From positions 930,001 to 994,000 of the forward strand of contig CAJFCJ010000002.1 in NCBI GenBank assembly GCA_904063045.1: a stretch of 64,000 bases of DNA, in the 5' to 3' direction. Made by a program: the position numbers and the translations under genes. Under the pieces are notes generated by a model. That model searched no databases and was not told where the DNA came from. It saw nothing but the letters and a program-made list of their open reading frames with translations. This DNA comes from Dimorphilus gyrociliatus. Its lineage: Eukaryota; Animalia; Annelida. Position 1 is the stretch's first letter; the number at the start of each line of letters is the position of its first letter. Below are positions 48,450 to 54,427 of the stretch, piece after piece.

Positions 48450-48531
48450 ATGAGCGACATACTTGGGAAAATTTTTGGAGGCAAGGACAAATCTGACAAG
48501 TCGCAGAGAGGGTCGGAAGTGAAAACGGAAG
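48450..48531 (+). other. Candidate alternative PKA-C first coding exon ([27 protein letters not shown], phase 1)
   Basis: ATG, 82 nt, donor AG|GTAAAA; phase matches exon 2; no other gene accounts for it. Confidence 0.65.
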
Positions 48532-51500: not shown

Positions 51501-54427
51501 TGTTTTGATAAGTGTTTGTATCGGCCGAAATTATCTAAATTTAGATCCGACCCTCATGGCATGGCCTGTAAACTCTCTATTTCAATATATTTCTATTGTC
51601 TGCTGTTTGAAGTGCATGTTTTCAGTGTTGATCCATAGAGATACGAGGGTTAAAATGGCTGATACAGAGGAAAATGAATTTGAAAAGACGGTGGATTTTA
51701 TATATTTGCGAGAACTAAAACCTTCACCTGATTTTCAGAACACAGCAAGCTTGGACGATTTCGACCGTATGAAGACTCTTGGAACAGGGTCATTTGGCAG
51801 AGTAATGCTCGTACAGCATAAGGCTACCAAAGAATATTATGCCATGAAAATACTCGACAAGCAGAAGGTGGTCAAATTAAAACAGGTTGAACATACGCTT
51901 AATGAAAAGCGCATTTTGCAAGCTATTACGTTTCCTTTTCTGGTGAAGATGGAGTACAGTTTTAAGGTAATACTAACGACAATTCTTACTCAACTATTCC
52001 ACATCTAGTAATAATACCTGTATTTTTTCAGGACAATTCGTATTTATATATGGTACTTGAATTTGTAACGGGTGGAGAAATGTTTTCCCATTTAAGGAAA
52101 ATAGGGCGTTTTAGGTATGTTGAAAAAATTGAAGATTCGTAAATGAAATTGTATATCAACAAAAAAAGTCGCCTTTTAAAAGCTAATTTGTGTACAAACG
52201 AACTATATTTCAGTGAACCTCATTCTCGGTTTTATGCCGCCCAAATTGTTCTCGCCTTTGAATATCTTCACTCGCTGGATCTCATTTATCGAGATCTAAA
52301 ACCGGAAAATTTGCTAATTGATTCAAAGGGTTACATAAAAGTAAGAAATGAAAAATCTTACTGTTTCTTGTCACTTTCTTTTCTCTTGCGCATGTGGAGA
52401 AAATCTTGTTTGTTTAATCAATTTAGTTAGAAATTAAAATGTTAACTTCACTGCTTGACCTTTTTTGCACCCGAGAGCTCTATATATCTTTGTTATTACC
52501 ATAATTTCAGTGAGAATCAAACTCGTTTTTACGCCAATCAAATTGTTTTGGTATTGGAGTATTTACACAACCTCGACATAGCGTACAGAGATCTGAAGCC
52601 TGAAAATTTATTATTCGACATATGGGGTTATCTAAAGGTCAAAAATTCGGATGATTAATTACTATTTAGTAACTGAAGAAAGGAAAATTTAATTTCTGTG
52701 ATATTTAGCAAAATTTTAGCTTCTGAATTATTGAACTTCATTCAAATACTACTAACGTAAAATATGATTTTTGTTGTGAATTCTAAAACTGATTAGTGTG
52801 CCAGTCAAAATAATCAGTTGCTTGCTCTGAAAAACCTGATTTTCCTGCTATTCCTTTCCCTTTAATTTTCGATTACTCTGAAAATGTTATCTTTATATAT
52901 TCAATCTGTTTTTCTTTATAGGTAACAGACTTCGGATTTGCTAAAAGAGTTAAGGGTAGGACGTGGACATTATGCGGAACACCCGAGTACTTAGCCCCAG
53001 AAATTATTCTGAGTAAAGTGAGTATCATTATGGCACATTGCAAAGCATAAAAGTTTACTTTTTTGTTTGTTTATCTACTTTTCTTTAACAAGTAATCTTT
53101 TTCGAACGCATTGTGAAGGTTGAATAAAGGTGCATGAATTTCCACAACTAACAATATTCAAAAATAAATTCAGAGTAGAATTTGATGGATAATAGTTCTT
53201 TTGCTGTTACACTTTGCAGCAATTTTTCTTTATCTGACATTATCATACATTATGGATTAACTATCTAACTTAACTTGCTTTCTGTCTTCACTGATCACAG
53301 TCTGGAACAATTCTATTGAATGGTTAGAATTGTTCAATACTGATATGAATTGTTAGGAAAATCCTTCCTACATTGCTAATTCCCACAGGGATACAATAAA
53401 GCTGTCGATTGGTGGGCAACTGGAGTTCTTATTTACGAAATGGCAGCAGGCTACCCGCCGTTTTTTGCCGATCAGCCAATACAAATATATGAAAAAATCG
53501 TCTCGGGGAAAGTGCGCTTTCCTTCCCACTTTTCTCATGATTTGAGAGACGTACTGAGAAATATGCTTCAAGTAGACCTCACTAAACGTTTTGGAAATTT
53601 GAAAAACGGTGTGAAGGACATTAAGGAAAGCAAGTGGTTCAGTAACGTAGATTGGATACAACTCTACCATGAACAAGTGGAGGCACCTTTTAAGCCAAAA
53701 ATCAAATGCGCCGGGGATACTAGTAATTTTGATGATTATGACGAAGAGCCTTTAGTCATAGCGAAAAGTGAAAAATTTACAAAAGAGTTTTACGACTTTT
53801 AGACTTAACTTTTTTTAGCACATTGATGAGTATATTATTAATTGTTAGCAATCCATGTTGCCGAAGTGTTAATATAACCCTTGTAATCAAATCTGGATGA
53901 TTGCTCATTTGCCTGAACCTTCACAAATTGCATTCGGAAATAAATTTAAAAATATTGCAGTACTTGTTTAGGTGTTAATTTTTACCGATGACATTAATTT
54001 TGTTAAAAAATAGGGTTACAACAAAGCTGTCGACTGGTGGGCTTTGGGTGTTTTGGTGTATGAAATGGCTGCCGGCTATCCTCCGTTCTTTGCCGATCAA
54101 CCTATTCAAATTTATGAGAAAATAGTTTCCGGAAAGGTGCGATTTCCTTCCCATTTTTCGAATGATCTACGGGACTTGTTGAAGTCTCTACTGCAAGTAG
54201 ATTTGACGAAGCGCTTTGGAAATTTGAAAAATGGAGTCAACGACATAAAAAACCATAAATGGTTTGGAACGACGGACTGGATAGCCGTTTATCAAAGAAA
54301 AGTTGAAGCCCCATTTGTTCCAAAGTGTAAAGGACCCGGAGATCCGAGTAATTTTGATGATTACGAAGAAGAACCTTTGCGAATATCAAACACTGAAAAA
54401 TGTGCTAAGGAATTCGCCGACTTCTGA
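48450..54427 (+). CDS. PRKACA: cAMP-dependent protein kinase catalytic subunit with alternative first, internal and terminal exons
   Basis: Canonical path: 51047-51089 [14 protein letters not shown], 51290-51351 [12 protein letters not shown], 51739-51966 LGTGSFGRV...YAMKILDK, 52032-52114, 52214-52340 YRDLKPEN, 52922-53017 TDFGFAK...[14 protein letters not shown], 54014-54427 GYNKAVDWW...EFADF*. Symbol denotes the PKA-C family; an invertebrate gene is co-orthologous to PRKACA/B. Confidence 0.97.
49500..49583. repeat. TA-rich microsatellite in the PKA-C 5' intron region
   Basis: Direct reading. Confidence 0.8.
49694..49706 (+). other. Candidate 13-nt PKA-C microexon giving N-terminus MAD-FKQFL
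   Basis: Polypyrimidine acceptor TTCTCCCTTTTCTTTATAG, GCT ATG GCT GAT T, donor GTATGT; phase 1 fits exon 2. Confidence 0.45.
52511..52637 (+). other. PKA-C mutually exclusive exon 5b (paralog of 52214-52340)
   Basis: Same 127-nt length and phases; [43 protein letters not shown]; intact splice sites. Confidence 0.9.
53389..53802 (+). other. PKA-C alternative terminal exon 7a (paralog of 54014-54427)
   Basis: 414 nt, same as 7b; own acceptor CCCACAG and own stop; [12 protein letters not shown]...[10 protein letters not shown]. Confidence 0.92.

What the first reader, a model, noticed from the sequence alone, without database searches (positions are those of the whole stretch)
48450..54427. 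A single PKA catalytic-subunit gene built as a three-position combinatorial cassette (up to 4 x 2 x 2 isoforms)
Seen: up to four phase-compatible N-termini, two equal-length catalytic-loop exons and two equal-length terminal exons, all with intact splice sites and no stops. About half of the kinase is encoded twice. Known: Aplysia PKA-C uses alternative N-termini and a 42-residue internal cassette, and C. elegans kin-1 uses alternative N- and short C-termini. Inference: this animal generates by exon duplication the PKA diversity that vertebrates obtain from PRKACA/B paralogs. I do not know a described case combining all three modules with a duplicated 137-aa C-terminal third. Coupling of the divergent modules (5b with 7a) could give a tissue-specific kinase, for example in sperm or cilia.
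Basis: partly seen in the sequence, partly recalled or inferred. Interest (0 to 1): 0.85.

Follow-up and report, generated by a model that had tools for sequence, protein, structure and literature searches.

The report
Worm PKA gene with spare parts
The single PKA catalytic-subunit gene of the tiny marine worm Dimorphilus gyrociliatus carries alternative versions of its start, its catalytic-loop exon and its whole last third; all are kept intact by selection, but I could not show which combinations the animal makes.

Summary
The exon pairs are real. Two 127-nt catalytic-loop exons (5a, 5b) and two 414-nt terminal exons (7a, 7b) have intact splice sites and matching phases. Three of the four proposed N-termini hold up. 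The one at 50313 is lost in a sister lineage, and the first exon most likely ends at 48573, not 48531.

The window is Dimorphilus gyrociliatus. Its public model, DgyrCDS1128 (511 aa), wrongly joins 7a and 7b in tandem and omits 5b and N1.

A sister-lineage contig about 82% identical shows strong purifying selection on every extra module: dN/dS is 0.026 for 5b, 0.024 for 7a, 0.097 for N4 and 0.025 for N1.

- **Ancient parts:** 5b is the orthologue of the second cassette of molluscs, the Aplysia type. N1 also has mollusc counterparts.
- **New part:** the 137-aa terminal-exon duplication looks lineage-specific, and I found nothing like it elsewhere or in papers.

No RNA evidence could be obtained. 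Isoform use, combinatorial splicing and 5b-7a coupling therefore remain untested.

The scan had noted this stretch before, on this same window only.

The parts
48450..48573 (+). Alternative first exon N1 ([11 protein letters not shown]...SKWPEF, plus 1 nt). It is not myristoylatable.
   Evidence: ATG, ORF and both phase-1 donors are conserved in the sister contig L001. dN/dS is 0.025 over the first 27 codons, and the next 42 nt are identical. The start resembles Dreissena X1, Bradybaena and Babylonia (M[AS]DI[IL]xK[IL]FG). The end matches their '(D/E)FF|K.FLA' junction.
51047..51089 (+). Canonical first exon N3 ([14 protein letters not shown]), the myristoylation type
   Evidence: 41/43 nt identical in L001 with no amino-acid change. 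Nearly identical (one residue shorter) to the N-terminus of other annelid and mollusc PKA-C proteins.
51290..51351 (+). Exon 2 (62 nt, A-helix [20 protein letters not shown])
51655..51738 (+). N4: an alternative start codon with 28 codons that run straight into exon 3. It would replace exon 1 and exon 2, that is the A-helix.
   Evidence: The ATG is conserved. Substitutions after it are mostly synonymous (dN/dS 0.097, Fisher p=2e-4). L001 has a 1-nt indel just upstream of the ATG, so coding starts here. No homologue was found outside the two Dimorphilus lineages.
51739..51966 (+). Exon 3 (228 nt)
   Evidence: Correspondence to vertebrate exons 3+4 fused is from my memory of exon sizes.
52032..52114 (+). 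Exon 4 (83 nt)
52214..52340 (+). Exon 5a, the canonical catalytic-loop cassette (alpha-E helix, YRDLKPEN, beta7-8)
   Evidence: 40/42 aa identical to other annelid-like proteins. 127/127 nt identical in L001.
52176..52408 (+). 233-nt block of perfect identity between the two lineages, covering 5a plus 38 nt upstream and 68 nt downstream
   Evidence: Longest perfect run in the alignment. The next longest is 94 nt. Neutral introns here are only 57-74% identical.
52511..52637 (+). Exon 5b, the variant cassette ([42 protein letters not shown]), with a weak GTCAAA donor
   Evidence: dN/dS 0.026, 12 synonymous against 2 non-synonymous changes, Fisher p=2e-8. It groups with the second cassette of molluscs, support 95/82.
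52922..53017 (+). Exon 6 (96 nt; DFG, activation loop, APE)
53389..53802 (+). Terminal exon 7a, the divergent copy of residues 214-350 (alpha-F to the C-tail). It has Ala at the Ser338 position and Phe at the Cys343 position.
   Evidence: 237 bits to mammalian C-alpha. dN/dS 0.024 with dS 1.04, Fisher p=8e-30. Found only here and in the sister lineage.
53939..53944 (+). AATAAA, 137 nt after the 7a stop and 69 nt before the 7b acceptor. It is a candidate proximal polyadenylation signal.
   Evidence: It reads AATACA in L001, and the 7a-7b spacer is 86% conserved.
54014..54427 (+). Terminal exon 7b, the canonical copy
   Evidence: 281 bits to mammalian C-alpha. dN/dS 0.007.

Best explanation
This is the single PKA catalytic-subunit gene of Dimorphilus gyrociliatus.

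Its default path is N3-E2-E3-E4-5a-E6-7b, which encodes a canonical 350-aa myristoylatable kinase.

Three further kinds of module are protein-coding and maintained by selection:
- Two alternative first exons. N1 splices to exon 2. N4 starts inside intron 2 and runs into exon 3.
- A mutually exclusive twin of the 127-nt catalytic-loop exon (5b). Exclusivity is enforced by reading frame.
- A proximal alternative last exon (7a) with its own stop codon and a downstream AATAAA. It replaces the whole C-terminal 137 residues.

Shown: the exons, their phases, their conservation and their purifying selection; the orthology of 5b to the mollusc cassette; and the resemblance of N1 to mollusc N-termini, which is short and weakly scored.

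Inferred: they are used as alternative exons of this gene, because nothing else upstream could supply the missing kinase parts. The extra modules also make minor or tissue-restricted isoforms, because their synonymous rates are 2-3 times those of the default exons.

The 7a/7b duplication arose in the dinophilid lineage after two introns were lost. The 5a/5b pair dates back at least to the annelid-mollusc ancestor, and the N1-type start probably does too.
For: - Exon anatomy.
- PKA identity.
- Species: the NCBI protein DgyrCDS1128 matches the window exons exactly.
- Sister-lineage contig L001: about 82% nt identity over the locus.
- Per-exon dN/dS is 0.007-0.097, with dS of 0.6-1.0 in N1, N4, 5b and 7a against 0-0.43 in the default exons. 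Fisher p values run from 2e-4 to 8e-30.
- The 5a-5b intron is 92% conserved and the 7a-7b spacer 86%, against 57-74% for ordinary introns. There is a 233-nt perfect block around 5a.
- 5b carries the '[13 protein letters not shown]' signature of the second cassette in Physella, Lymnaea, Biomphalaria, Haliotis, Mya, Mytilus and Pinctada. In the tandem mis-models (Pinctada, Mytilus, Mya, Biomphalaria) the order is the same, canonical first. The clade has support 95/82.
- N1 resembles Dreissena isoform X1 and others.
- In annelid-like metagenome contigs the last third is three exons and is not duplicated. 7a and 7b share a derived Arg in DLRD.
- AATAAA lies after 7a.
Against: - No Dimorphilus RNA-derived protein is in the database. 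Both metagenome scans found no Dimorphilus sequence.
- The best RNA runs hold only 0.21-0.23 of the stretch. That is about what the default mRNA alone would give.
- Selection is measured from one pairwise comparison with a lineage of unknown name.
- The position of 7a in the tree is unresolved because of its long branch, so 'lineage-specific' rests on intron positions and one shared residue.
- The AATAAA after 7a is AATACA in the sister lineage.
Confidence: 0.75

Rival explanations
1. The extra modules are functional but are used only in a few fixed combinations, for example one male-, sperm- or cilia-specific transcript such as N4 or N1 with 5b and 7a. The gene would then make 2-4 isoforms rather than a 12-way set.
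For: N1, N4, 5b and 7a all show the same raised synonymous rate, dS 0.6-1.0 against 0-0.43 in default exons. That would fit shared low or restricted expression. In Dreissena isoform X1 the N1-type start occurs with the variant cassette. A mussel N-terminal isoform is sperm-specific (PMC13425070). The published Dimorphilus stage-specific RNA-seq series covers embryos, juvenile females and adult females, with no separate male sample (PMC7854359).
Against: No junction or long-read data were available. Molluscs use the variant cassette with a single canonical C-terminus, so 5b does not need 7a.
Confidence: 0.35
2. 5b and 7a are decaying duplicate exons that are never spliced in.
For: No transcript containing them was found in any database searched. 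5b has a weak GTCAAA donor.
Against: Both keep exact length, frame and splice sites in two lineages whose neutral introns differ by 26-43% (K 0.3-0.6). dN/dS is 0.026 and 0.024, with 12 and 45 synonymous changes. 5b has orthologues in molluscs that appear in RefSeq isoforms.
Confidence: 0.03
3. The public 511-aa model is right: 7a (to ...DEEPL) and 7b are joined in one protein with a tandem C-lobe, and the N4 stretch is an in-frame insert.
For: DgyrCDS1128 (CAD5111862.1) is annotated this way. The pipeline gave high weight to transcript alignments (PMC7854359).
Against: - The model needs two unusual donors, G|GTTATA after exon 2 and TTA|GTCATA inside 7a.
- It discards the conserved last 15 codons and the stop of 7a, which are under selection.
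- The stretch upstream of the N4 ATG has a frame-breaking 1-nt indel in L001.
- In my judgement a kinase with two alpha-F-to-C-tail segments has no precedent. Similar tandem models in other species look like the same annotation artefact.
Confidence: 0.02

Closest known systems
Aplysia californica PKA catalytic subunit, A1/A2 cassettes and N1/N2 termini (Beushausen et al. 1988 Neuron 1:853; 1992 PNAS 89:1641; titles seen; the papers are not held, so the details are from memory)
   Same: One gene. Mutually exclusive 42-residue cassettes cover the alpha-E helix and catalytic loop, and there are alternative N-termini. The mollusc second cassette and Dimorphilus 5b share a signature and form one clade. 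The order in the gene is the same.
   Different: No duplicated C-terminal exon was seen in any mollusc protein retrieved; every isoform compared was closer to 7b than to 7a. Some molluscs, such as Haliotis and Biomphalaria, have a third cassette type that Dimorphilus lacks.
C. elegans kin-1 (13 exons, six alternative 5' exons N'1-N'6, at least 12 isoforms; PMC9692727; the alternative C-termini of Gross et al. 1990 are from memory)
   Same: A single PKA-C gene diversified by alternative first exons and an alternative C-terminal exon.
   Different: The nematode alternative C-terminus, and the similar ones in Ischnura, Priapulus, Eriocheir, Lingula and contigs L020/22/24, replace only about the last 40-45 residues with a very divergent tail. 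7a replaces 137 residues, alpha-F to the C-terminus, and remains a clear homologue (77% aa).
Vertebrate PRKACA/PRKACB 5' exon variants (C-alpha1/C-alpha2, C-beta1-4; PMC3625193, PMC5526564) and the mussel sperm-specific N-terminal isoform (PMC13425070)
   Same: A myristoylated exon 1-1 type start (N3) plus non-myristoylated alternatives that splice to exon 2 (N1).
   Different: All known active vertebrate isoforms keep exons 2-10. N4 would drop exon 2 and the A-helix. Vertebrates have no alternative catalytic-loop or terminal exons.

Membership tests
PKA catalytic subunit (C-alpha/C-beta-like clade of AGC kinases) | High identity to mammalian C-alpha over the kinase core and C-tail. PMC3625193 used >75% to define the clade. 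| tested here: met
   7b scores 281 bits, E 1e-83, over residues 214-350 of C-alpha. 7a scores 237 bits. In other invertebrate PKA-C proteins E3, 5a and E6 are mostly 89-94% identical.
PKA catalytic subunit (C-alpha/C-beta-like clade of AGC kinases) | Catalytic loop [11 protein letters not shown], activation-loop Thr, FDDY and the C-terminal FxxF | tested here: met
   All are present. Both 5a and 5b have YRDLKPEN. Both 7a and 7b have NFDDY and F..F (FYDF, FADF).
PKA catalytic subunit (C-alpha/C-beta-like clade of AGC kinases) | Conserved exon lengths and phases of exons 2-10 (PMC3625193) | tested here: inconclusive
   Exon lengths here are 62, 83, 127 and 96 nt; 228 and 414 nt would be fused exons. 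The match to vertebrate exon lengths rests on my memory. The paper passages I read state conservation but give no lengths. Metagenome contigs split the last third at residues 42 and 97.
Mutually exclusive exon pair (Aplysia A1/A2 type) | Adjacent homologous exons of equal length and phase, where inclusion of both or neither breaks the frame | tested here: met
   127 nt each, and 127 mod 3 = 1. They lie 170 nt apart and share 29/42 aa.
Mutually exclusive exon pair (Aplysia A1/A2 type) | Orthology of the variant exon to the mollusc variant cassette | tested here: met
   Shared V153/L154/I162 signature. Clade support 95/82. Same order in tandem mis-models.
Mutually exclusive exon pair (Aplysia A1/A2 type) | mRNAs contain one or the other exon | not testable with these tools
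No Dimorphilus transcript-derived proteins are in the database.
Alternative last exons with alternative polyadenylation | Each terminal exon has its own acceptor, stop codon and downstream poly(A) signal | tested here: inconclusive
   Both have an acceptor and a stop. AATAAA lies at 53939 after 7a but reads AATACA in the sister lineage. No canonical hexamer occurs within 270 nt after 7b.
kin-1-type alternative C-tail exon | Only the last 40-45 residues are replaced, by a highly divergent tail | tested here: not met
   7a covers 137 residues. Its tail is closer to canonical tails (69-78%) than to the divergent type (44%).

The most novel reading that the evidence does not exclude
Dimorphilus evolved, by duplicating a fused exon 8-9-10, a second version of the whole alpha-F-to-C-tail third of PKA-C. 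This version lacks the turn-motif Ser338 and Cys343 equivalents. It is expressed through an alternative last exon, perhaps together with 5b and N1 or N4, as a distinct isozyme in a restricted cell type such as the dwarf male, sperm or ciliated cells. The 233-nt invariant block around exon 5a would be the splicing switch.
Probability: 0.25. Interest if true: 0.6.

Novelty: new variant of a known kind. Interest (0 to 1): 0.45.

Why it matters
PKA-C is the textbook kinase, and invertebrates have one gene for it. How that one gene serves many contexts is only partly known.

- **Age of the cassette:** the catalytic-loop cassette first seen in Aplysia is at least as old as the annelid-mollusc ancestor and is still under strong constraint.
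- **A natural experiment:** swapping the whole alpha-F-to-C-tail third while keeping the same N-lobe could be expressed and compared biochemically.
- **Annotation:** the public gene model for this species is wrong. Similar tandem mis-models in bivalves and a snail hide the same cassette.

Tried and rejected
- **N2 (50313-50351).** Rejected. It is phase 0 with its good donor, and the ATG and donor are absent in L001.
- **Reads.** Sending that retry after being told the cap was counted was a mistake on my part. No junction data resulted.
- **Handling of 49500-49540.** The Rfam scan began at 49600. One local script aligned L001 to the whole window file, which contains them. Later scripts skipped them.
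- **Protein searches for 7a-containing or Dimorphilus transcript-derived proteins**. They returned only the sister-lineage genomic ORF P0002 and the chimeric NCBI model.
- **Metagenome scans.** An exact 7a DNA pattern found nothing. The 7a tail protein found 34 loci, all with canonical-type tails.
- **RNA structure as the exon switch.** Inverted repeats place the 5b donor opposite an upstream intron element and put a hairpin over the 5a donor. Their number is what chance gives in AT-rich sequence. Folding z-scores are -1.3 and 0.0. This is not supported.
- **Rfam on 49600-54600:** nothing.
- **Bacterial promoter/terminator scan**: irrelevant to a eukaryotic gene.
- **Recent gene conversion between 7a and 7b.** Third-position identity is uniformly low, 0.29-0.59, so rejected.
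- **Tree placement of 7a:** unresolved because of its long branch.
- **Papers not held:** the Aplysia and kin-1 primary papers.
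Full report
**What is there.** Window 48450-54427 (+ strand) holds a eukaryotic PKA catalytic-subunit gene. These are the exon coordinates I verified:

| Exon | Coordinates | Length / note |
|---|---|---|
| N3 | 51047-51089 | first exon, [14 protein letters not shown] |
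| E2 | 51290-51351 | 62 nt |
| E3 | 51739-51966 | 228 nt |
| E4 | 52032-52114 | 83 nt |
| 5a | 52214-52340 | 127 nt |
| 5b | 52511-52637 | 127 nt |
| E6 | 52922-53017 | 96 nt |
| 7a | 53389-53802 | 414 nt, includes stop |
| 7b | 54014-54427 | 414 nt, includes stop |

All internal exons follow AG and precede GT, and the phases fit. Because 127 is not a multiple of three, including both 5a and 5b, or neither, breaks the frame. 5a and 5b share 29/42 residues. 7a and 7b share 106/137 residues. Synonymous sites are saturated between the copies, and there is no tract of recent gene conversion. 7b is the canonical copy, at 281 bits to mammalian C-alpha residues 214-350. 7a is the divergent one, at 237 bits.

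**Which organism, and what the public annotation says.** An exact-sequence look-up of a 7a relative brought up the NCBI protein DgyrCDS1128 (CAD5111862.1) of Dimorphilus gyrociliatus. Its exons are identical to those of the window. The 511-aa model is chimeric. It joins N3 and E2 through a shifted donor to the stretch upstream of exon 3. It uses 5a only. It then cuts 7a at ...DEEPL through an internal GTCATA donor and appends all of 7b. N1 and 5b are not annotated.

Logan contig L001 is 7.4 kb, and L002 and L003 are the same sequence from other runs. It comes from a related lineage whose name I could not obtain. It aligns to the whole locus at about 82% nucleotide identity. Ordinary introns are 57-74% identical, which gives K of 0.3-0.6. 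Every proposed module except one is under strong purifying selection:

| Module | dN/dS | dS |
|---|---|---|
| N1 | 0.025 | 0.63 |
| N4 | 0.097 | 0.97 |
| 5b | 0.026 | 0.78 |
| 7a | 0.024 | 1.04 |
| 7b | 0.007 | 0.43 |

Fisher tests of synonymous against non-synonymous changes give p from 2e-4 (N4) to 8e-30 (7a). The extra exons must therefore be translated in the frame proposed. They are not dead duplicates, and they are not mere poison exons. Their synonymous rates are two to three times those of the default exons. I read that, as an inference, as a sign of lower or more restricted expression.

**N-termini.**
- *The candidate at 50313* fails. Its ATG and donor are missing in L001, and its good donor is in the wrong phase.
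A second phase-1 donor lies at 48573|GTACGT. The extra 42 nt are identical in L001. The longer exon ends ...SKWPEF-F|KQFLAQ. That is the same '(D/E)FF|K.FLA' junction seen in alternative N-termini of Dreissena X1, Mya, Lingula and several unnamed transcripts. Its start, [10 protein letters not shown], resembles MADIIHK[IL]FG of Dreissena, Bradybaena and Babylonia isoforms.
- *N4* begins at ATG 51655. L001 has a 1-nt indel just upstream of that ATG and codon-type substitutions after it, so translation starts there. The N4 protein would lack exon 1 and exon 2, and so the A-helix. I found no counterpart elsewhere.

A systematic scan for other conserved ATG-to-donor exons between 48200 and 51289 found none. 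The maximum is therefore 3 x 2 x 2 = 12 products.

**The catalytic-loop pair is old.**
- Mollusc PKA-C isoforms carry either a canonical cassette or a second one with the signature [15 protein letters not shown]. 5b ([15 protein letters not shown]) shares that signature.
- Gene models of Pinctada, Mytilus, Mya and Biomphalaria that wrongly include both cassettes show the same order, canonical then variant.
- A tree of the 42-residue cassettes puts 5b, the mollusc second cassettes and a cassette from an annelid-like metagenome contig in one clade. Support is 95/82, and the clade is separate from all canonical cassettes including 5a. Few columns are available, so the signature residues carry most of the weight.
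- This is the arrangement first described in Aplysia (Beushausen et al. 1988; title seen, paper not held). Finding it in an annelid extends its known range but is not a new principle.

**The terminal pair looks new and local.**
- Two database searches, covering fragments and full-length proteins, found a 7a-like sequence only in the sister lineage.
- In annelid-like metagenome contigs the same 137 residues are split into three exons (1-42, 42-97, 97-137) and are present once.
- Both Dimorphilus copies lack those two introns, and both share a derived Arg (DLRD). The simplest history is intron loss followed by duplication. The genome paper reports intron loss in this species (PMC7854359).
- The tree cannot confirm this, because 7a sits on a long unresolved branch.
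- Other protostomes have an alternative C-terminal exon, but it replaces only the last 40-45 residues with a very different tail. I saw this in Ischnura X2 against X3, Priapulus, Eriocheir, Lingula and contigs L020/22/24. C. elegans kin-1 is the described example (details from memory).
- 7a differs from 7b mainly after residue 262. It has Ala at the Ser338 position and Phe at the Cys343 position. It keeps FDDY and the terminal FxxF.
- Ala at the Ser338 position also occurs in the canonical tails of several metagenome contigs and flatworms. That loss alone is therefore not exceptional.

**How it probably works.**
- Choice of start is by alternative promoters (inferred).
- Exon 5 choice is mutually exclusive by frame. 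5b has a weak GTCAAA donor, so 5a is the default.
- The 5a-5b intron is 92% conserved, and a 233-nt block (52176-52408) covering 5a and its flanks is identical in the two lineages. At 94% identity such a run has a probability of about 5e-7. This is the usual mark of a regulated alternative exon.
- I could not show an RNA structure. Candidate pairings exist but are at chance level, and the folding energies are ordinary.
- 7a and 7b behave as proximal and distal alternative last exons. An AATAAA lies 137 nt after the 7a stop, and the spacer is 86% conserved.

**What is missing.**
- I obtained no RNA evidence.
One local script did read the whole window file.
- The best RNA runs hold 0.21-0.23 of the stretch, roughly the default mRNA.
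- Usage, combinations, 5b-7a coupling and tissue or sex specificity are therefore open.
- The published stage-specific RNA-seq series covers embryos and females, so a male-restricted isoform could easily have been missed.

**Verdict.** The 'dead duplicate' alternative is excluded. Two of the three module types are inherited from the annelid-mollusc ancestor and are already known in kind. The duplicated 137-residue terminal exon is a new variant for this kinase. The scan's earlier notes on this stretch concern this same window only.

Noticed in passing
window 52176-52408: A 233-nt stretch (exon 5a plus 38 nt and 68 nt of flanking intron) is identical in two lineages whose ordinary introns differ by 26-43%. 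No Rfam match and no significant fold were found. It is probably a splicing-control element.
   Followed up: partly
window 51047-54427 (NCBI CAD5111862.1, DgyrCDS1128): The public gene model is a 511-aa chimera. It concatenates both terminal exons, reads part of intron 2 as coding, and omits 5b and N1.
   Followed up: yes
P0244, P0245, P0246, P0147, P0138 (Pinctada, Mytilus edulis, M. coruscus, Mya, Biomphalaria): Public PKA-C models of these molluscs contain both catalytic-loop cassettes in tandem. This looks like the same kind of annotation error, hiding a mutually exclusive pair.
   Followed up: partly
P0187, P0193, P0197 (Haliotis asinina isoforms X3, X2, X1); P0134, P0135 (Biomphalaria): Some gastropods have three different cassette types at this position, not two. 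In Bradybaena and Babylonia the third type (...GYCK) occurs together with the N1-type N-terminus.
   Followed up: partly
L020:711-848 and 3001-3126 (also L022, L024); P0280 vs P0293 (Ischnura X3 vs X2): A short, very divergent alternative C-tail exon (about 45 aa, ...NFDKYDEDEKLF...) lies about 2.2 kb upstream of the canonical tail exon in an unnamed metagenome animal. The same kind of tail is seen in Ischnura, Priapulus, Eriocheir and Lingula isoforms. This suggests an old alternative C-tail in protostomes.
   Followed up: partly
P0242 (Ixodes), P0243 (Ostertagia), P0122 (Mauremys), P0123 (Mycteria), P0124 (Oppiella): Gene models with larger tandem repeats of PKA-C segments. Whether these are assembly or annotation artefacts, or real exon duplications, was not examined.
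   Followed up: no
window 54999-56934, minus strand: Two long ORFs (212 aa and 412 aa) lie directly downstream on the opposite strand. I did not examine them.
   Followed up: no
window 54428-54700: No canonical poly(A) hexamer occurs within 270 nt after the 7b stop. The first 94 nt of this 3' UTR are identical in the sister lineage, up to the end of its contig. A TA/CA-rich simple repeat begins near 54600.
   Followed up: no
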